A DNA stretch of 63,577 nt, the filler included, from Octopus bimaculoides (lineage: Eukaryota): assembly GCF_001194135.2 (NCBI RefSeq). It is 9 parts of 7 records of this genome, joined end to end, with 100 filler letters (N's around TTAATTAATTAA, not from the genome) between each part and the next. Parts side by side here need not be neighbours in the genome. Positions count along the whole stretch, not along the records: positions 42,229 to 51,985 come from NC_068996.1; 8 more parts are not named here. One strand, given 5' to 3'. Under the pieces are notes generated by a model, which did not search any database, was not told the origin of the DNA, and saw only the letters and a list, made by a program, of their open reading frames with translations. Shown here one piece after another: positions 42,229-51,261 of this stretch (position 1 is its first letter; the number at the start of each line of letters is the position of its first letter). A program made the position numbers and the translations under genes.

Positions 42229-42267
<39 letters not shown>

Positions 42268-43580
42268 GCATGCGTATAAATTATGTGTGGAAGTTTGAGT
42301 GTATAAAACAAGATTTTAAAATATTCAATACATGCAAGCAGATGCAATGCATTGATGCCCACAAATAAGTAGAGCGTGTGTGCATGCGCGCGTATATGTA
42401 TACATAAATACACCTACACATATATATACACACACATATACATACGAGCACATATATGTATACACGCATACATATTATATGCCTCTGTATATGTGGATGC
42501 GTGTATGCATATATAAATATATACATATGTATGTGTGGATGAATGTATATACGTATACATGTCCTCTCCACCATTGTACATATATATGTGTGTGTGCGTG
42601 TGTATGTACGTATGTTTGTATGTGTGTATGTATGTATGTATGTATGTACTAGCATGTAGAGAGGAAAGAGAAAGAGAGAACGAGTAAGTTAGTGAGAGAA
42701 ACGTACACAGCGCTGCGCGCGCATGCACGTGCACACACAGTTGAAGAACCTCACGTGAAATCTTCAGTATCTAACAGAATTCGAATTTTATTTTCCTGGA
42801 CGTCATAGGACTACGTGTGTGTGTGTGCGTATTCATGTGAATTTGTATATCTATGTATGTATGTATGTACGAATGTATGTACGTATGTATGTATGTATAT
42901 ATGTATGTATGTACGTATGTATGTATGTGTGTATGTATGTATGTATGTATGTATATGTGTGTGTGCTTCTGTGTCTGTTAATTTCATGTACATTCCACGT
43001 TCCCCTAAAAATAAAATGGAACGAAACAGAAAATGGACTCGTCCATACGTTAACTGCGGAAAGAACGCTGAATGCCTCATTTCAAATTGTCAAGGCAAAG
43101 TAAGAGGTATGTAAGCCGAAAAGAACCGGTTTGATATGTATGTATATATATAGACACAATATTAATAGCACTAAAAATAATGGTTTCTTTATTTCTTATT
43201 TATTAATGGTGTCGACGAGATAAGATTTGGGCATTCGTTACTGTCTCTCACGGTTAAATATTTTATCTGTATCAAAACCTGACAACACAATATATCTGAA
43301 AAAAAAAAAGAATATTATTCCATAATACAGTAACAATAATAACGACAATAACAACGACTGTTATTTCTAACATTTTGAAGTTCCTGCAACAATAACAATC
43401 ATAATTATCGTATAATAATCACAATCGTCGCATTATCTTTATTTATTTAGTAATAATAATACTTCGACCGTGTTTATATATATATTAGTTACAGGATTGA
43501 ATAGCGTTTGGTTTCTGTTATAACTATAACATCGTCGACAAACATTTTACCATTTAGTCTTATAAACAATTGGAGAAATT

Positions 43581-45053
43581 ATGCCATTTTCGAACTCACC
43601 ATCTGAAAATGCATATTCTTACCCAAACAGTAATGTATCGTCGACAGAAGAAACGCAAGAAGCAACTCAAAGAACTCCATTACCCTCACAGATAAGACTA
43701 AAATATGACAGGGACTTCATTCTTAAGTTACAGTATAAAGAAGCTTCACTCACCAAACCAGTTGGACTTCCAGACTTACCAGAAATATTATTCAAAAAAC
43801 CACAAATTCCGAAGCAACTTAAATACAACAAAATACGGCGAGACATCATACCGTTTAAATGTTCTAAGAATATGAAATCTGTGGATGAATATGTAAATGA
43901 TTCGGAGGACGAAGAACTTAACACGAAAATGAAAAATATTGCAAGCAGACTAGCACCGGAAAAATATAAATCCGTTTTATCACAGATACGTGACATTCAA
44001 ATTGATAAAGAGAGTAAATTAGTAGCCATCATGAATCTTTTGTTTGAAAAAGCAACCAGTGATCCTATGCTTTCTACGGCATATGCTTACGTATGTCGGT
44101 GTCTGACTTTGAAGAGAGTTCCGTCTATTCACTGTCACAAGGAAGTGGTGAATGTCCATAAAGTTCTTAATAAGAAATGTCAAAAGGAATTCGAAAAATA
44201 CCAAGTTGAAGAAGCAATGTTGAATAAGAAATTGCAGCAAATTGAAGACACCGACAACAATATAGAAAAACTGAAATTTCAAAAGGAACTTGTGAAGGAT
44301 ATTGAAATTTTCAAAAGGAAATCCCAAGCAAATGTTCGGTTTCTTTGTGAATTGTTTAAACTTGGTGTGTTGAGGGAAAACACGATGCAGAAATATATCA
44401 AAAAAATGCTTCAGTCTTTATCAGAGAATAGTTTGGAAAGTGTGTGTCTGTTGTTCAATACAATTGGTGAGAGACTTGATACGGGAAAGAAGTTTAAAAT
44501 GGATGTGTATTTCATTCAATTAAAAAGCATCGCAGAAGAGAATTCGACTCCTAACAGACTGAAAGTAATGATCGAAAACCTAATTAGTTTACGTGAAAAT
44601 CAATGGAACCAAAAAGAGGCTGAGAACCATACAAAACAAAAAGGCATGACGAGCGTAAAAGACAGCATGAAAGAGGAAACACTGAAGGTCATGGCAAATA
44701 GCTACTATGAGAACAAGGTCAAAGATATTTACCAAAACGGTGACGGTTCCGTTGCTTCTAATATGGGAGATATATTCTCAAGCGATCCTGGGACCAAAAC
44801 TAGTTCTTCATATCAACAGCCACAACAACAACAGCAGCAGCAGCAGCAACACATCAAAGAGGAGTATGTCAAACCTGGTTATATGAAAATCTTCGATATC
44901 GATGCTCAAAACAAATGTATGGATTTGACTCAACTGGAGAGGAAATACTGCAATTTGGTTTACGATGGCACAACCAGAGCATCTGCCAGAGGAGATGTGA
45001 TGGTACCAAACTGTAGCCCAAATATCATTCGAGAAACCAAAGAAGCTGTTTAA
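43581..45053 (+). CDS. Intronless eIF4G-like protein (4E-binding-type motif + MIF4G/HEAT-1 domain, no MA3/W2); probable retro-paralogue
   Basis: 490-aa uninterrupted ORF, with an in-frame TAA 15 nt upstream of the ATG. KYDRDFILKLQYKEASLTKPVGLPDL matches the eIF4G KRYDREFLLGFQ..ASMQKPEGLP segment. aa ~113-342 match MIF4G: LFEKATSDPMLSTAYAYVCRCL, KCQKEFEK, KRKSQANVRFLCELFKL, SLESVCLLFNTIGERLD, MDVYFIQL, RLKVMIENLISLRENQW. Gene symbol withheld because orthology to EIF4G1/3 is not established. Confidence 0.9.
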   Translation: MPFSNSPSENAYSYPNSNVSSTEETQEATQRTPLPSQIRLKYDRDFILKLQYKEASLTKPVGLPDLPEILFKKPQIPKQLKYNKIRRDIIPFKCSKNMKSVDEYVNDSEDEELNTKMKNIASRLAPEKYKSVLSQIRDIQIDKESKLVAIMNLLFEKATSDPMLSTAYAYVCRCLTLKRVPSIHCHKEVVNVHKVLNKKCQKEFEKYQVEEAMLNKKLQQIEDTDNNIEKLKFQKELVKDIEIFKRKSQANVRFLCELFKLGVLRENTMQKYIKKMLQSLSENSLESVCLLFNTIGERLDTGKKFKMDVYFIQLKSIAEENSTPNRLKVMIENLISLRENQWNQKEAENHTKQKGMTSVKDSMKEETLKVMANSYYENKVKDIYQNGDGSVASNMGDIFSSDPGTKTSSSYQQPQQQQQQQQQHIKEEYVKPGYMKIFDIDAQNKCMDLTQLERKYCNLVYDGTTRASARGDVMVPNCSPNIIRETKEAV

Positions 45054-45520
45054 TAATAGGTTCGCTGACGCATTCTGTTATTGTCGAAAGATGTCAACCG
45101 GTGAGGCGGAGAAATGCGAAATCTAATTGAGCTTCAGCAGATATATAACTATATCTCAAGGATCTAATTAGAGAAAGAGAAAGAGAGAGAAGGAGAGAGA
45201 GAGCTAGGGAGGGAGCTAATGGTAAGGCTAATGAATACATTCCTTTGCTAACTTTTAATTATTAATATCTCTTTATTTTCCAAAGAGTCAAAGAAATTTT
45301 ATGAAAAAAAAACTGCCCCTAAAACAAAACAACAAAAAAACAATAAAGAAAAATTCCTAATTACAACAAAGTAATTTGGAATCTATTCCACTCAAATGAG
45401 AATTTAAAAAAAACAACAAAAAAACACGAAAATTGATTTTTAAAAAGAAATGAATATATATGAATACACACACACGCACACATATACACACATGTATATA
45501 CAATGTATATATATATTATG

Positions 45521-45572
<52 letters not shown>

Positions 45573-45645
45573 CACACATGTATATACAATGTATATATAT
45601 ATGTATACACATGTATATATATTATGTATGTATATTTATATTTAT

Positions 45646-45680
<35 letters not shown>

Positions 45681-46751
45681 ATGTGTTGATTTTATTATTT
45701 TTAATTTGAATAAAGTTGTATTGGTTGGTTCAAAATGCATTTAACTTGTATTGGTTTTTTAAATATTTCCTTTTCACTGGACTGAAAAACGTTTTATCCG
45801 TTCTCTCCAGGCGTAGCTGTGAAGTTGAAAAGCTTGTTTCCCAGCCTTGTTGTCTTGAGTTCAGTCCCATATGGCGACATCTTGGGCAAATGTCACCTAC
45901 TAAAGCCGCGGGCCGGCCAATACCTTGTGAGCGTATTTGGTAGATGGAAACATAAAAGAGCCCCTCTTATATATTCTCTAGGTCGCATTACCGAACCGCT
46001 GGTTTACGATGATATAAACAAACCAACCCCAGTTGTCAAGCAGTGATGGGAACACACGCACACACACACACACACACATACGTGCACATAGCTATATACA
46101 GGGATAGCCATAAGTCGCTTTGCCCATTTATTATTATTTGAAATGTGTATATATAAATACATACGACGGGTTTCTTTCAGTTTCCGTCTGCCAAATCCAC
46201 TCACAAGGCTTTGCCCAAGGTGCCGCGCAGTGGGACTGAACCCGGAACTAAATGGTCGGGAAGCAAGCTCCTTACCGCCAAAAAAAGGTGGTTCTGGGCA
46301 ATATTTGCAGTTTCGGTTTCTTTTTTCTCAAAAACCGTTTTTTTCTCTTTTTTTGTTCTCATTCATTTCATATTTCCAGTACACACCACTAGCCTCACGA
46401 CCATTCATTGTAAATAACCTCGGAGCAATCGCAGTTCCCACGTCGGTGGAAAACTTGAGAAAAGGCGTCGCCCGATATCGCCCCGCATACTTAAGATAAA
46501 TTTGGACATCTGTATTGATCTCAAATTTTGCCACAAAAGCGGCAATTTCGGGTAAGGGGTGAGTCAGTTGCGTAGAACACGAAACAATGAAAGGCAAAGT
46601 CAACCTCGACAGAATTTGAACTCAGAACATAAAGACGGACGAAATGCCGCTATGCATTTTGTCTAGCGTACTAACGATTCTGCCGGCTTATTGTCCACCC
46701 TTCGCTATGTTTATATACGCGTTTAAGAAGATAATACAGTGAAATAGACAT

Positions 46752-47131
46752 TGATGGCACTCCGTCGCTTACGACGTCGAGGGTTCCAGTTGATCCAATC
46801 AACAGAACAGCCTGCTCGTGAAATTAACGTGCAAGTGGCTGAGCACTCCACAGACACGTGTACCCATAACGTAGTTCTCGGGGATATTCAGCGTGACACA
46901 GTGTGACAAGGCTGACCCTTTGAATTACAGGCACAACAGAAACAGGAAGTAAGAGTGAGAGAAAGTTGTGGTGAGAGAGTACAGCAGGGTTCGCCACCAT
47001 CCCCTGCCGGAGCGTCGTGGAGCTTTAGGTGTTTTCGCCCAATAAACACTCACAACGCCCGGTCTGGGAATCGAAACCGTGATCCTATGACTTCGAGTCC
47101 GCTGCCCTAACCACTGGGCCATTGCGTTTCC
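46752..47131 (-). mobile_element. Full-length family-B tRNA SINE with TSD
   Basis: A-box TGGCCCAGTGG and B-box GGTTTCGATTCC on the minus strand; GAAATAGACAT on both flanks (46741-46751, 47135-47145). Confidence 0.88.
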
Positions 47132-48156
47132 ACAGAAATAGACATAGTACATAAATAGACATAGTGAAATAGACATAGTACATTTGTAAACACGGGTGAA
47201 AAGAGAAACGTATGCCCGAGAAACAAAATTTATTGATCACATTAAAATGTCATATTTGTTGTCTTCATACTCGATCCCAGAACACTGGAAATAGAAGGGC
47301 GCATCACAAATATTGTTATTGTATGTTGAATACACTGGTCCTGTTATATCCAGCTGGGTTTAAGACAACCGGCCTTACGTCTCTTTAACAACCATGATAT
47401 ATAGAAAGCTTGTTGCAATGGAAACAGTTGGGCCTCCGAAAGAGGATGTCCAACCGGTACTTTGTTCCGAGACCCAGGAGCTAGTGAGGGCTCCACAGCA
47501 ACCATGCAACATCCCCATCAAAAGCAAGCACTTTCTACCACCCCTAGCCCGACATATATTCACATACACAAACATCACTATACTTATCAAACTGCACTTC
47601 TTTTTATTAGTATTTATTATTAATCATTATAGGCCTAGTTATATAGACTTATGATAACACTAAGAGTACCTACCTACAGCGCAAGGCCTCAAAGGGATCT
47701 TGTACTTTGTTGCAATATTTTCCTTGGAAGCCCTGAGAAACAGTATGATTTTTGAGCGTGAGAAAAGGATGATACGTGCTAACATAAATATTAGATTGAA
47801 GATTAAACGCATGGGATAAAGGTGTGTAGGTGAGTAGATATCGGAAACCGACCCGTTTGACGCTACCACACAGCCACGTCTGCGCCCTAAATATGTGAAA
47901 AATAAGTACTGAGGCTGATCTGTTTGACGAAAACCCTTCCAGGTGGTGCCGCCCCAGCATGGCCGCAATGCAATGACTGAAACAAGTAAGGATAAAAGAA
48001 AAGATAATAAATAATAACAATGGTTTCTTTTATTTGCCACAAGAACAACAGATGACTGGGACACAATACAAAGACGAATATAAAGTAAGGAGATTAACGG
48101 AGAACGGAATGATCGTCTGGTCGTAGTGGTCATTTTCCTTTTGCTCTGGTCAGTGC

Positions 48157-48460
48157 TTCTTCTTCTTCTTCTTCTTCTTTTTCTTCTTCTTCTTCTTTTT
48201 CTTCTTCTTCTTTTTCTTCTTTTTGTTCTTCTTCTTCTTCTTCTTCTTCTTTTTCTTCTTTTTGTTCTTCTTCTTCTTCGTCTTCTTCTTCTTCTTCTTC
48301 TTCTTTTTCTTCTTCTTCTTCTTCTTCTTCGTTCTCCATTCTTCTTCTTCTTCTTCTTCTTCTTCTTCTTCTTCTTCTTCTTCTTCTTCTTCTTCTTCTT
48401 CTTCTTCTTCTTCTTCTTCTTCTTCTTCTTCTTCTTCTTCTTCTTCTTCTTCTTCTTCTT
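48157..48460. repeat. (CTT)n microsatellite, interrupted then pure
   Basis: Direct reading. Confidence 0.97.
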
Positions 48461-48783
48461 TGTTCTCCATTATTCTACTACTCTCTTCAGTTTCGTCCAA
48501 AACAGATATCCCGAAAAAAGAAAAAAAAAAAAAGAAAAAAACTAAGCGATGTTGTCCGCTGCTTAGCACTGGTCTGATCCTTATTTTCACCATGCCCTCC
48601 TCCACTTTCGCCCCTCCAACACTACCACATACACACTCCACCTCTATCCGTCCACTCTCCGTCGATCACAATGTCAGCAATGTTAAGTTGCATTCGAAAT
48701 ATGTTAAAAGCGCCACCTCCAAGACATACGGGTGGAAAGAAACTTCAAAAATTCTCTCAGCTCTGCCCAGTTACGGAGATGTA

Positions 48784-49025
48784 ATTTATTTCTTTATTAC
48801 CCACAGGAGGAGGTGTGGGCTAAACATAGAGGGGACAAACAAGGACAGACAAAGGAATTAAGTCGATTACATCGACCTCAGTGCGTGACTGGTACTTATT
48901 TAATCGACCCCCAAAAGGATGAAAGGTAAAGTCGACCTCGGAGGAATTTGAACTCAGAACGTAACGGCAGACGAAATACCGCTAAGCATTTCACCCGGGG
49001 TGCTAACGTTTCTGCTAGCTCACTA
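48784..49025 (-). mobile_element. Family-A SINE with tail B and a 12-bp TSD
   Basis: TACGGAGATGTA at 48772-48783 and 49026-49037. Confidence 0.88.
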
Positions 49026-49791
49026 TACGGAGATGTACTTGCATAGCAAGTGACTTGATCTGAGACGTGTGCTGGAACAAAACCAATTGCAGCATGGAAG
49101 ATGTTTGTAAGCCATTTAAGAACACACAAAAACTGTTAGTTTCACTTCAACATTTAAATTTAATTTGTGCTGCATCTGAGAAAGTAGCAGTTAGTTCATA
49201 ATATGTATGTATGCATGTATGTATGTATGTATATATGCATGTATGTATGTATGTATGTATGCATATATGTATGTATGTATGTACGTAATGTACGTATGTA
49301 TGTGAGTATTTACGTATGTAAGTTTGTAGACATGTCTGCGTGTGTATAGATGTGTATGTACACGTGAACGTATATGTTTATGTACTGATATGGGTTTGTT
49401 AAAGTTGTATATACAATTGTTACTCTGTATAACGGTGAATAGATACAATGTCTTANNNNNNNNNNNNNNNNNNNNNNNNNNNNNNNNNNNNNNNNNNNNN
49501 NNNNNNNNNNNNNNNNNNNNNNNNNNNNNNNNNNNNNNNNNNNNNNNNNNNNNNNNNNNNNNNNNNNNNNNNNNNNNNNNNNNNNNNNNNNNNNNNNNNN
49601 NNNNNNNNNNNNNNNNNNNNNNNNNNNNNNNNNNNNNNNNNNNNNNNNNNNNNNNNNNNNNNNNNNNNNNNNNNNNNNNNNNNNNNNNNNNNNNNNNNNN
49701 NNNNNNNNNNNNNNNNNNNNNNNNNNNNNNNNNNNNNNNNNNNNNNNNNNNNNNNNNNNNNNNNNNNNNNNNNNNNNNNNNNNNNNNNNNN

Positions 49792-49862
<71 letters not shown>

Positions 49863-49986
49863 TAGATAGATATATACACACACATACTCATACGTACATG
49901 GATATGCATACATACTCACACATACATACATATTAATCTATGTACACTCATACAACTATATATACTTACATATATATATTTCAGTA

Positions 49987-50018
<32 letters not shown>

Positions 50019-50572
50019 TAGCAATCAGATATACAACTTGAACAGACACACATATCAGTGTATAAACATACGTTTACATGTACATACACATATATACACA
50101 CTTACATACCTAAATACTCACATAAATACATACATGCATGCATACATACATACATACATACATACATACATACATACATACATACATGGCATAGGCGCAG
50201 GAGTGGTTCTGGGTTCAGTCCCACTGCGTGGCACTTTGGGGTACATGTCTTCTACCATAGCCTCGGGCCGACCAAAGCCTTATCATCCTTAAAGATTGAA
50301 TTTCCCTCTGGAAACAGTTCTGCAACCATCGGATGAATTTGATCAGATAAAATGCTTAAATAGTCTTGACTATAAATTCTGCCATGAAGGGAAACCACTG
50401 GGCCGGCAGATTTCCAAGATATAGTCCCCCCAGATCGCCGCAGATCCTCCTCCACGTTGGAAGAAGGCAGTCTGGGTCAAATGCTTCTTTTGACTGTCCC
50501 CAGTAGTCGGAAATAAGGTAAAAGTTGGTGGTCGGAAATAAGGTAAAGGATGACTCGTCCGAGAAAATAGCA

Positions 50573-51261
50573 GGATCTAGTTTAAAACGGGGGCACCAGT
50601 ATTTTCTTAACGAAACACTAACGAAACACTTTGAAACTTGGGACACTGGTAGAATGTGTCATATAAAACATCTTTTACTCTTAGTCTTCTTAACCAAAAA
50701 AAGGAATTCGCAAGTTATTCCATGTTAAAGTTGTCGTATTTCTGTAATTTCAACCAATCACTGACGTCTATTCAGCTGAATAGAGTTACTGCTGGGCGGT
50801 CATAAAAATGTTATTCCCTGTGACATATTTCATCCGGTTTAATCGTAATTTATACGCATATATTGTTTATATAATAAATTACGCTGTGCGTATCTGTGTG
50901 TAACAATTTTAGAGTTCGGATTCTATTGTTAGGGTTAGTTTTAGGGTTAGGGTTAGGGTTAGGGTTAGGGTTAGGGTTAGGGTTAGGGTTAACAGTCTAG
51001 TTAGGGTTAGGGTTAGGGTTACGGGATTAATACGATATACACCGTTACAGCGCTAACTGTTTTCAACTGAATAGACGTCAGTGATTAGTAGAAATTATCG
51101 AAATAAGACAATTTTTTACATGAAATAAATTCGAATACAAAAATTTTTTTCTGTTCTATAACACAAAATAGATAAGTATACGAAGTTTGAAAGTCTTTCG
51201 GTACCAAAAACACTACATAAAACATTAATGAAAACTGGTGCCCCCGTTTTAAACTAGATCC
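50573..51261. mobile_element. 689-bp MITE with perfect 28-bp TIRs, 8-bp TSD and an internal telomeric-repeat array
   Basis: TIR GGATCTAGTTTAAAACGGGGGCACCAGT (50573-50600; reverse complement 51234-51261); TSD AAATAGCA (50565-50572, 51262-51269); inner imperfect inverted repeats at about 50705-50790 and 51045-51137. Confidence 0.92.
50929..51021 (+). repeat. Interstitial (TTAGGG)n array
   Basis: Eight perfect units at 50941-50988, three more at 51001-51018, and one at about 50929. Confidence 0.95.

What the first reader, a model, noticed from the sequence alone, without database searches (positions are those of the whole stretch)
43581..45053. Compact intronless eIF4G paralogue: 4E-binding motif + MIF4G only
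Seen: the only long intact ORF in 63 kb of decayed repeats. It starts about 40 aa before a YDRDFIL motif, has a linker of about 65 aa, a complete MIF4G domain and an unrelated ~150-aa tail. Known: animal eIF4G1/3 are multi-exon proteins of over 1300 aa with a PABP site, a longer linker, and MA3 and W2 (Mnk-binding) domains; DAP5 lacks the 4E site but keeps MA3/W2. This architecture fits neither. Inference: a retroposed, strongly diverged but stop-free paralogue under selection. It could be a minimal cap-complex scaffold or an eIF4E-sequestering repressor, analogous to tissue-restricted eIF4G paralogues in insects, and may mark a lineage-specific translational control module.
Basis: partly seen in the sequence, partly recalled or inferred. 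Interest (0 to 1): 0.78.

Follow-up and report, generated by a model that had tools for sequence, protein, structure and literature searches.

The report
Conserved intronless short eIF4G paralogue
An octopus gene without introns encodes a cut-down copy of the translation-initiation scaffold eIF4G, keeping only the docking site for the cap-binding protein eIF4E and the first helical domain; selection has preserved it in octopuses, argonauts and probably cuttlefish, so it is very likely a working lineage-specific translation factor, though its expression and function are untested.

Summary
Window 43581-45053 (+) is one uninterrupted 490-aa ORF with four parts: an eIF4G-type eIF4E-binding region (aa 29-75, YDRDFIL at 42-48), a 67-aa linker, a complete MIF4G domain (aa 116-340, Pfam E=7e-31) and a 150-aa tail with no detectable relatives.

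It is not a pseudogene. Octopus sinensis and O. vulgaris carry 490-aa copies that differ by 2-3 residues (47 synonymous against 3-4 non-synonymous changes). Argonauta hians has a 488-aa single-exon orthologue (74% identity, dN/dS about 0.06, dS saturated). A 361-aa single-exon Sepia protein groups with them.

The canonical octopus eIF4G is a separate gene: 1569 aa, at least 21 exons over 61 kb, only about 33% identical. Its matching region is split over at least seven exons, so the short gene is best read as an old retrogene.

Profiles of the canonical RNA-binding/Trp linker and of the eIF3-binding linker do not match the short forms. MA3, W2 and a PABP site are absent.

Most likely it binds eIF4E and forms a non-canonical or competing cap complex. 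Expression, eIF4A binding and the direction of the effect are untested. Database gene models exist, but no paper was found.

The parts
43581..45053 (+). Single-exon CDS of the short eIF4G paralogue (490 aa plus TAA stop)
   Evidence: ORF list. It is nearly identical (2-3 aa differences) to annotated proteins XP_036367469.1 (O. sinensis) and CAI9734292.1 (O. vulgaris). It is single-exon in the genomes.
43665..43805 (+). eIF4G-type eIF4E-binding region, aa 29-75: canonical helix, connecting stretch and downstream hydrophobic LPDLPEILF stretch
   Evidence: A profile of 30 canonical eIF4G 4E-binding regions scores 42.7 bits. It matches PDB 5t46_B, the eIF4G1 peptide chain. The block aa 41-75 is 94% identical between Octopus and Argonauta, omega 0.02.
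43704..43724 (+). Canonical motif YDRDFIL (Y-X4-L-phi with Ile in the Leu position)
   Evidence: Sequence. It is identical in Argonauta, and Sepia has YNREFLL.
43806..43925 (+). Shortened linker, aa 76-115, lacking the canonical basic RNA-binding stretch and the ENAWKP Trp motif
   Evidence: In the alignment about 58 parental residues are missing and no Trp is present. The profile of the canonical pre-MIF4G linker scores -0.5 here, against E=4e-21 on canonical O. bimaculoides eIF4G.
43926..44600 (+). MIF4G / HEAT-1 domain, aa 116-340
   Evidence: Pfam PF02854 E=7.2e-31, full length. Human eIF4G1/eIF4GII MIF4G structures match at E 1e-44 to 1e-48. It is 89% identical to Argonauta, omega 0.03. 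The AF2 model is helical here, pLDDT 60-85.
44601..45050 (+). Octopod-specific C-terminal tail, aa 341-490, with no detectable homologue; predicted mostly disordered
   Evidence: No hits in Pfam, PDB, canonical eIF4G or Sepia downstream DNA. pLDDT is below 50. It is still constrained, omega 0.07. Sepia lacks it.
44814..44849 (+). Poly-Q run (QQPQ9, aa 412-423) inside the tail, not conserved in Argonauta
   Evidence: Sequence and alignment.
44859..45050 (+). Conserved C-terminal module, aa 427-490 (…KYCNLVYDG…DVMVPNCSPNIIRET-EAV)
   Evidence: 49 of 64 residues are identical between Octopus and Argonauta despite saturated synonymous sites.
45300..45450 (+). A-rich tracts with an AATAAA (45342-45347), 250-400 nt after the stop. 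They may be the 3' UTR end or a relic of a retrocopy poly(A) tail; this is not demonstrable.
   Evidence: Sequence. The region is 88-95% identical to O. sinensis and O. vulgaris.

Best explanation
This is a functional protein-coding retrogene. It derives from a processed mRNA of the canonical cephalopod eIF4G gene and has been kept for a very long time in octopods and probably in all coleoid cephalopods.

Its product keeps the whole eIF4G-type eIF4E-binding region and the MIF4G/HEAT-1 domain. It has lost the PABP site, the basic RNA-binding linker with the conserved Trp (the third eIF4A contact), the roughly 100-aa eIF3-binding linker, MA3 and W2. Octopods added a new conserved C-terminal module.

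The mechanism I commit to is this. [quoted passage not shown] That produces an alternative cap complex which cannot recruit eIF3/43S, PABP or Mnk in the canonical way. It would therefore act as an eIF4G-like 4E-binding regulator that dampens or re-routes cap-dependent initiation on the mRNAs or in the cells where it is made. The MIF4G domain and the octopod tail would supply the specific partners.

Shown: the gene structure, the homology, the domain content, the losses and the purifying selection. Inferred: eIF4E binding, competition, and the direction of the effect.
For: Domains and motif.

Retrogene: the CDS is single-exon in O. sinensis, O. vulgaris, A. hians and S. pharaonis. The parent L007 has at least 21 coding exons over 61 kb. 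Short-form aa 30-73, 111-158, 179-226 and 253-301 hit four separate parental exons spread over 11.7 kb.

Selection: 47 synonymous against 3 non-synonymous changes to O. sinensis (P=4e-30, omega about 0.015). dN/dS is 0.06 against Argonauta with dS saturated. The 4E block has omega 0.02 and MIF4G 0.03. In Sepia the counts are 17 synonymous to 1 non-synonymous. Unique flanks are about 89-93% identical, against 94-100% per 150-nt bin (96.6% overall) in the CDS.

Losses: profiles of the canonical post-MIF4G (eIF3-binding) and pre-MIF4G (RNA-binding plus Trp) linkers hit canonical O. bimaculoides eIF4G (E=5e-10 and 4e-21) but not the short forms (scores of 1.3 or less). There are no MA3 or W2 relics anywhere in the piece.

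Origin: NJ trees put the octopod and Sepia short forms in one clade (100%), sister to canonical octopus eIF4G (71-75%).

Literature: the eIF3-binding region downstream of MIF4G is described as crucial for cap-dependent initiation in higher eukaryotes, and residues 682-720 as the RNA-binding domain (PMC12709193). The conserved Trp is described as a significant eIF4A contact (PMC9177959).
Against: There is no expression evidence. No transcript-like contig carries the octopus protein, and whether the Sepia Logan contigs are RNA or DNA could not be established.

eIF4E binding is inferred from homology only, and the motif has Ile where the consensus has Leu.

A repressor-like direction is a guess. 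Yeast eIF4G works without a direct eIF3-binding region. Mextli, a MIF4G-like 4E-binding protein, is reported to promote translation (PMC4573856).

MIF4G keeps only 48 of 83 positions that are conserved in canonical animal eIF4G, so eIF4A binding is uncertain either way.

The short-form clade could be inflated by long-branch attraction. Analysed alone, the octopod form joins canonical octopus eIF4G in only 30% of replicates.
Confidence: 0.5

Rival explanations
1. The gene is a functional retrogene, but the product is a genuine minimal initiation scaffold that activates translation. It would bridge eIF4E and eIF4A on the cap and reach the 43S complex through HEAT-1 contacts or through a partner of the octopod tail, for a specific tissue or mRNA class. 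This would be analogous to the testis eIF4G2 of Drosophila or to Mextli.
For: The eIF4E-binding region and a full MIF4G domain are both under very strong constraint. The short forms keep about as many canonical MIF4G positions (48-49 of 83) as functional plant eIF4Gs do (52-60). The conserved C-terminal module in octopods (49 of 64 identical) could recruit downstream factors. Mextli combines a MIF4G-like domain with 4E-binding motifs and is reported to promote translation via eIF3 (PMC4573856).
Against: The roughly 100-aa eIF3-binding linker, the RNA-binding linker and the Trp contact for eIF4A are not detectable. PMC12709193 describes the eIF4G-eIF3 contact as crucial in higher eukaryotes. 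Sepia lacks the tail altogether, so the shared ancestral function cannot depend on it.
Confidence: 0.33
2. The gene is functional but the protein no longer works at the cap. The MIF4G domain would have been recruited to another RNA process such as decay, storage granules or histone-type mRNA handling, as in other MIF4G-only proteins, with the 4E motif of minor importance.
For: The protein is strongly diverged from every eIF4G (32-37% identity). It has a new tail of unknown function.
Against: The eIF4E-binding block is the best-conserved part of the protein: 33 consecutive identical residues between Octopus and Argonauta, omega 0.02. It is still recognisable in Sepia at 30.3 bits.
Confidence: 0.08
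3. It is a processed pseudogene whose reading frame has stayed open by chance.
For: It is intronless and lies among simple repeats. No transcript evidence was found.
Against: The frame is open at 490, 490, 490 and 488 aa in four octopod genomes and at 361 aa in Sepia species. Synonymous to non-synonymous counts are 47:3 (P=4e-30) and 17:1 (P=1e-11). Synonymous sites are saturated between Octopus and Argonauta while 74% of the protein is identical. There are no indels in the CDS between the window and O. sinensis, although the flanks are full of them.
Confidence: 0.02
4. It is an exon of a larger gene: either the ordinary eIF4G gene or a gene with further coding exons upstream or downstream.
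For: Only 1.35 kb upstream and 6.9 kb downstream are available in the piece. UTR introns cannot be excluded.
Against: Canonical eIF4G is a separate 61-kb locus with its own 4E and MIF4G exons and is only about 33% identical. An in-frame stop lies 18 nt before the ATG and the MPF start is conserved in Argonauta. Gene models from separate annotations of different species give the same boundaries. No other eIF4G-like coding segment is in the piece. No other gene is called within 10 kb in three octopod genomes.
Confidence: 0.03

Closest known systems
Canonical metazoan eIF4G (eIF4G1/eIF4G3 type), here O. bimaculoides XP_052829428.1, 1569 aa
   Same: It is homologous over the eIF4E-binding region and MIF4G. 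It is the probable parent.
   Different: The short form is only about 33% identical and has a single exon, against at least 21 exons. It lacks the N-terminal about 700 aa (PABP site), about 58 aa of the 4E-to-MIF4G linker including the ENAWKP Trp, the eIF3-binding linker, MA3 and W2.
[quoted passage not shown] 2000, cited in PMC12709193)
   Same: An eIF4E-binding site plus the middle HEAT domain, without the C-terminal modulatory third.
   Different: According to PMC12709193, the middle part of human eIF4G carries an eIF3-binding region just after MIF4G. No such region is detectable here.
eIF4G2 / DAP5 / NAT1 / p97
   Same: It is an eIF4G paralogue with a MIF4G domain (4iul_A hit at E=5e-17).
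   Different: DAP5 lacks the eIF4E and PABP sites but keeps MA3 and W2 (PMC12709193). The octopus protein is the reverse.
Yeast eIF4G (Tif4631/2) and trypanosomatid EIF4G3/4 (own knowledge for the latter)
   Same: A 4E-binding motif plus a single HEAT/MIF4G domain and no MA3 or W2. Yeast eIF4G lacks the eIF3-binding domain (PMC12709193). 2vso_E hits at E=2.5e-9.
   Different: These are the main, essential eIF4Gs of their organisms, with PABP- and RNA-binding regions. The octopus protein is an extra, lineage-specific copy beside a complete canonical eIF4G.
Mextli (Drosophila, C. elegans)
   Same: It combines a MIF4G-like domain with canonical and non-canonical 4E-binding motifs and competes with eIF4G for eIF4E (PMC4573856).
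   Different: Mextli has a KH domain and its 4E motifs are C-terminal. It is not an eIF4G-derived retrogene. No KH domain is present here.
Germline-specific eIF4G paralogues and retrogene copies of translation factors (Drosophila eIF4G2/off-schedule; intronless testis PABPC2/3/6)
   Same: These are lineage-restricted extra copies of general translation factors. The PABPC copies are intronless (PMC12151635 abstract; Baker & Fuller and Franklin-Dumont, cited in PMC12709193).
   Different: As far as I know, Drosophila eIF4G2 keeps the full domain set. The tissue specificity of the octopus gene is unknown.
4E-BPs (functional class)
   Same: A canonical motif with a downstream hydrophobic stretch at the expected distance. 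The N-terminal 112 aa give a weak eIF_4EBP Pfam match (E=0.0024, below the cut-off).
   Different: The octopus protein is much larger, carries a HEAT domain, and its binding region is homologous to that of eIF4G rather than to 4E-BP1-3.

Membership tests
eIF4G family, canonical metazoan eIF4G1/3 type | eIF4E-binding motif Y-X4-L-phi with the extended eIF4G-type region | tested here: met
   YDRDFIL at aa 42-48 (Ile at the Leu position). The profile of canonical regions scores 42.7 bits over aa 29-75. It matches 5t46_B.
eIF4G family, canonical metazoan eIF4G1/3 type | MIF4G / HEAT-1 domain | tested here: met
   PF02854 E=7.2e-31, profile 3-202 of 203. Human eIF4G1 MIF4G at 154 bits.
eIF4G family, canonical metazoan eIF4G1/3 type | eIF3-binding linker after MIF4G | tested here: not met
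   A profile of 25 canonical linkers hits canonical O. bimaculoides eIF4G at E=4.9e-10 but scores -14.1 (window), -6.8 (Argonauta) and 0.8 (Sepia).
eIF4G family, canonical metazoan eIF4G1/3 type | MA3 (HEAT-2) and W2 (HEAT-3) domains | tested here: not met
   Pfam finds only MIF4G. A tblastn of canonical eIF4G against the whole piece finds only the 4E-MIF4G core.
eIF4G family, canonical metazoan eIF4G1/3 type | N-terminal PABP-binding region | tested here: not met
   Only 41 residues precede the 4E motif, and they have no significant similarity to the parental upstream sequence.
eIF4G family, canonical metazoan eIF4G1/3 type | Binding of eIF4A by MIF4G, including the conserved Trp contact N-terminal of the domain | tested here: inconclusive
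   48 of 83 canonical conserved columns are kept. The ENAWKP Trp is absent in octopods and is Phe in Sepia. Its importance is described in PMC9177959. No binding assay was possible.
Retrogene (processed, retroposed gene copy) | Lacks the introns of the parental gene across the copied region | tested here: met
   The CDS is single-exon in four genomes. The parental region aa 719-1088 lies on at least seven exons, and four exon-sized HSPs are spread over 11.7 kb.
Retrogene (processed, retroposed gene copy) | Poly(A) remnant and target-site duplications | tested here: inconclusive
   A-rich tracts lie at 45300-45450, but flanks are not alignable between Octopus and Argonauta. At this age these marks are not expected to survive. 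TSDs were not searched for.
Retrogene (processed, retroposed gene copy) | Located away from the parental locus | tested here: inconclusive
   The 65-kb parental locus L007 holds only the parental exons, and the piece holds no other eIF4G exons. The chromosomal position of the window relative to the parent is unknown.
Functional gene as opposed to pseudogene | Purifying selection on the reading frame | tested here: met
   Omega is about 0.015 (against O. sinensis), 0.06 (against Argonauta) and 0.02-0.10 (Sepia pairs).
Functional gene as opposed to pseudogene | Transcription and translation | not testable with these tools
   No transcript-like contigs carry the octopus protein. The Sepia contigs of 2.0-2.35 kb from many runs are collinear with the genome and of unknown library type.
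DAP5/eIF4G2 | No eIF4E site; MIF4G plus MA3 plus W2 | tested here: not met
   A 4E site is present and MA3/W2 are absent.
Mextli | N-terminal MIF4G-like domain, KH domain, C-terminal 4E-binding motifs | tested here: not met
   There is no KH domain, and the 4E motif is N-terminal of MIF4G. The definition is from PMC4573856.

The most novel reading that the evidence does not exclude
A retrogene born before octopuses and cuttlefish diverged would encode a stripped-down eIF4G that forms a cephalopod-specific alternative cap-binding complex: eIF4E plus short eIF4G, with or without eIF4A, and no eIF3, PABP or Mnk contacts. In octopods it would be wired to a new partner through a conserved C-terminal module. 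That would amount to a lineage-specific layer of translational control in animals already known for unusual post-transcriptional regulation.
Probability: 0.3. Interest if true: 0.65.

Novelty: new variant of a known kind. Interest (0 to 1): 0.5.

Why it matters
eIF4G is the hub of cap-dependent initiation, and extra paralogues usually mark specialised translational programmes such as the insect germline, plant iso4F or trypanosomatid complexes. Here a natural protein pairs an intact eIF4G-type eIF4E-binding region with the HEAT-1 domain alone, and selection has held it for a very long time. It is in effect a natural deletion experiment. It can show what an eIF4E·HEAT-1 module does without eIF3, PABP and Mnk contacts. 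It also gives cephalopod biology a concrete, testable candidate for lineage-specific translational control. The gene models exist in databases under generic eIF4G names, but no description was found in the searched literature.

Tried and rejected
- Word-index homologue searches with the protein and with a three-sequence alignment returned only the octopod and Sepia proteins and one fungal hit. They missed even canonical octopus eIF4G, so they say little about absence elsewhere.
- A tail-only search found nothing and did not recover the query's own cluster, so it is an unreliable negative.
- The tail was compared with canonical eIF4G, with Sepia downstream DNA, with Pfam and with PDB. Nothing was significant.
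- N-terminal similarity between the octopod and Sepia short forms looked suggestive in the alignment (MP..SPE) but is no better than shuffles. It was dropped as evidence for orthology.
- Synteny via the CAND1-like gene next to the Sepia copy found no match within 10 kb of the octopod loci.
- The AlphaFold2 model from a four-sequence alignment was poor (pLDDT 50), so no fold search was run.
- Attempts to tell whether the Sepia Logan contigs are transcripts failed. They are collinear with the genome. A 187-nt difference is a TAAG-flanked insertion, not an intron. The run accessions appear in no paper.
- Gene structures of the Patella and amphioxus short forms were not on record.
- Primary papers with eIF4A-contact residues (PMC3659266, PMC2474498) and Morino 2000 (PMC85104) are not held, so contact residues were not mapped one by one.
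- The first bootstrap script timed out.
- Rfam and tRNA scans of the piece were empty.
Full report
**Observation.**
Within the piece 42229-51985 the only long ORF that is not low-complexity is 43581..45053 (+), 490 aa. All other ORFs of 80 aa or more lie in (TATG)n, (TA)n or (CTT)n arrays or across the N gap. An in-frame TAA lies 18 nt upstream of the ATG.

- Pfam finds a full-length MIF4G domain at aa 116-340 (E=7.2e-31).
- The PDB sequence search finds human eIF4G1/eIF4GII MIF4G at E 1e-44 to 1e-48. It finds a second, separate match of aa 26-74 to the eIF4E-binding stretch of eIF4G1, including the eIF4G1 peptide chain of entry 5T46.
- A profile I built from the eIF4E-binding regions of 30 canonical-length eIF4Gs scores 42.7 bits on aa 29-75. 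It covers the canonical helix (YDRDFIL, aa 42-48), the connecting stretch and the downstream hydrophobic LPDLPEILF stretch.
- The 150-aa tail has no significant relatives.

**Whose gene it is.**
The protein is 2 residues different from XP_036367469.1 ('eIF4 gamma 3-like', Octopus sinensis) and 3 different from CAI9734292.1 (O. vulgaris), all 490 aa. The window's own sequence is present in UniRef/MetaClust. Unique flanking DNA is about 89-93% identical to the O. sinensis and O. vulgaris loci. The window therefore comes from a different Octopus species, probably O. bimaculoides; that is an inference. Argonauta hians has a 488-aa orthologue, 74% identical over the full length. In all these chromosome-scale assemblies the CDS is one exon, and no other gene is called within 10 kb.

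**It is under strong purifying selection.**
- Window against O. sinensis: 50 differences in 1473 nt with no indels, 47 synonymous and 3 non-synonymous. That gives binomial P about 4e-30 and omega about 0.015.
- Window against Argonauta: pS is 0.70 (saturated) and pN 0.12, so NG86 dN/dS is 0.06.
- By region: the 4E-binding block has omega 0.02 (33 consecutive identical residues), MIF4G 0.03, the linker 0.11, the tail 0.07 and the first 40 aa 0.20.
- DNA outside the CDS does not align between Octopus and Argonauta.

The pseudogene reading is excluded.

**Parent and mode of origin.**
The canonical O. bimaculoides eIF4G (XP_052829428.1, 1569 aa) carries the eIF4E-binding region, MIF4G, MA3 and W2. 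It occupies 61 kb with at least 21 coding exons. The part from the 4E motif to the end of MIF4G (aa 719-1088) lies on at least seven exons. The short protein aligns to that locus only in exon-sized pieces: aa 30-73, 111-158, 179-226 and 253-301 hit exons spread over 11.7 kb. A copy that lacks every one of these introns is best explained by retroposition of a processed mRNA. Poly(A) and target-site marks cannot be expected at this age. A-rich tracts at 45300-45450 are compatible with such a relic but not diagnostic.

The retrocopy lacks the 3' two-fifths of the parental coding sequence. No MA3 or W2 relic is present in any frame of the piece. How the 3' part was lost is unknown; it could have been a later truncation or a short source transcript.

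**A cuttlefish counterpart.**
The exhaustive search of 1.84 billion representatives gave 3144 hits. After the Argonauta orthologue, the best single-domain match is a 361-aa protein annotated 'EIF4G' in Sepia pharaonis (CAE1258657.1). It is also a single exon. It starts 60 aa before YNREFLL and stops three residues after MIF4G. Copies from other Sepia species differ by 17 synonymous to 1 non-synonymous, and by 11 to 4, changes.

NJ trees with 36, 64 and 152 sequences place the octopod and Sepia short forms in one clade (100% bootstrap). That clade is sister to canonical octopus eIF4G (71-75%), and no other representative joins them. The two share derived residues (YAY for YAN, IQID-ES, LRENxW, N122S, T125A, F129Y, L139I, K219Q, R328K) and the same shortening of the 4E-to-MIF4G linker.

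There are caveats:
- The two short lineages are only about 36% identical, so long-branch attraction is possible.
- Analysed alone, the octopod form attaches to canonical octopus eIF4G in only 30% of replicates, and the Sepia form in 65%.
- The N-termini are not significantly similar.
- Synteny could not be checked.

I put about 70% on a single origin before the octopus-cuttlefish split, which by my own knowledge is of the order of 250-300 million years ago. The age is in any case at least that of the Octopus-Argonauta split.

**What the protein has and lacks.**
Kept:
- The whole eIF4G-type eIF4E-binding region.
- The MIF4G helices. The short forms keep 48-49 of the 83 columns that are at least 85% conserved among 27 canonical animal eIF4Gs, against 52-60 for two plant eIF4Gs.

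Lost:
- Everything N-terminal of the 4E site, including the PABP site.
- About 58 residues of the linker, corresponding to the basic RNA-binding region.
- The conserved ENAWKP tryptophan. Octopods have no Trp there and Sepia has Phe.
- The region after MIF4G.

Profiles built from the canonical pre-MIF4G and post-MIF4G linkers find canonical octopus eIF4G (E=4e-21 and 5e-10) but not the short forms.

According to PMC12709193:
- The roughly 100 aa after MIF4G are the eIF3-binding site.
- That contact is crucial for cap-dependent initiation in higher eukaryotes, though not in yeast.
- Residues 682-720 are the RNA-binding domain.

According to PMC9177959, the tryptophan is a significant third contact to eIF4A.

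The octopod tail is predicted mostly disordered (poor model). It ends in a 64-residue module that is 77% identical between Octopus and Argonauta, which suggests a binding site for an unknown partner.

**Mechanism.**
Shown: a conserved gene whose product retains an eIF4G-type eIF4E-binding region and HEAT-1 and lacks all other canonical contacts. Inferred: it binds eIF4E in competition with canonical eIF4G and 4E-BPs. Since it cannot engage eIF3, PABP or Mnk canonically, it forms a non-canonical cap complex. I favour an attenuating or re-routing role (0.5) over a true minimal activator (0.33). The activator remains plausible because yeast eIF4G and Mextli work without, or differently from, the metazoan eIF3 linker. 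eIF4A binding is open.

**Comparison and novelty.**
The protein belongs to the eIF4G family by descent, but it fails four of the defining features of canonical metazoan eIF4G. It is the architectural opposite of DAP5. It resembles yeast and trypanosomatid eIF4Gs and the experimental human 'core domain' minus its eIF3 site. Functionally it may parallel Mextli or a large 4E-BP. Other lineages also have short 4E-plus-MIF4G forms (Patella, amphioxus), but these group with their own canonical genes. Literature searches found no description of a cephalopod eIF4G paralogue. The gene exists only as automatically named models.

I rate it a new variant of a known kind, of moderate interest. It is a well-supported, old, lineage-specific translation-factor retrogene with an unusual architecture. 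It has no expression or functional data yet.

Noticed in passing
window 50928-51021: There is an interstitial telomere-type repeat, about 15 copies of TTAGGG (reported by TRF as GTTAGG), in the middle of the piece.
   Followed up: partly
window 48156-48460: About 101 copies of CTT followed by a long T run create spurious poly-L/poly-F/poly-S/poly-E/poly-K ORFs on both strands.
   Followed up: no
window about 49450-49825: A run of N (assembly gap) is flanked by (TA)n, (GA)n and (TATG)n microsatellites. ORFs listed across it are artefacts.
   Followed up: no
window 42848-42954, 49202-49328, 50088-50187, 51883-51985: TATG/ATAC tetranucleotide microsatellites recur all over the piece and in the O. 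sinensis locus. They give hundreds of cross-matches in BLAST.
   Followed up: no
window about 45780-46060: A GC-richer block (0.43 against 0.18 just before it) contains a B-box-like GAGTTCAGTCC. It looks like a tRNA-derived SINE, but ARAGORN and Rfam find nothing.
   Followed up: partly
L003 11389-11575 (Sepia pharaonis, 3' flank of the short eIF4G): A 187-nt insertion flanked by a TAAG duplication is present in S. pharaonis and one other Sepia species (L005) but absent from another (L009/L010). It is MITE-like, not an intron.
   Followed up: partly
proteins P0042/P0169 (Patella vulgata) and P0036 (Branchiostoma): Other animals also have eIF4G-like proteins that end at or soon after MIF4G. Patella has isoforms of 475 aa and of 788 aa (the latter with two MIF4G copies). 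Amphioxus has a 708-aa protein with a Cys-rich, RING-like N-terminus, then a 4E motif and MIF4G. Their gene structures were not retrievable.
   Followed up: partly
proteins P0004, P0007, P0011, P0013 and others (teleost fishes): The highest total scores in the exhaustive search come from fish 'eIF4G1-like' or 'titin-like' models with 2-4 MIF4G-matching stretches. These suggest tandem duplications or merged gene models.
   Followed up: no
protein P0031 (O. bimaculoides canonical eIF4G, 1565 aa): In the alignment this isoform jumps from the fourth HEAT repeat straight into the GW-rich linker, as if the exon for the last MIF4G helices were skipped or missed in the model. The tblastn exon map also has gaps at aa 969-994 and 1089-1125.
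   Followed up: no
L003 17455-21086 (-): A CAND1/TIP120-like gene lies 6.4 kb downstream of the Sepia short eIF4G. No counterpart lies within 10 kb of the octopod loci.
   Followed up: partly
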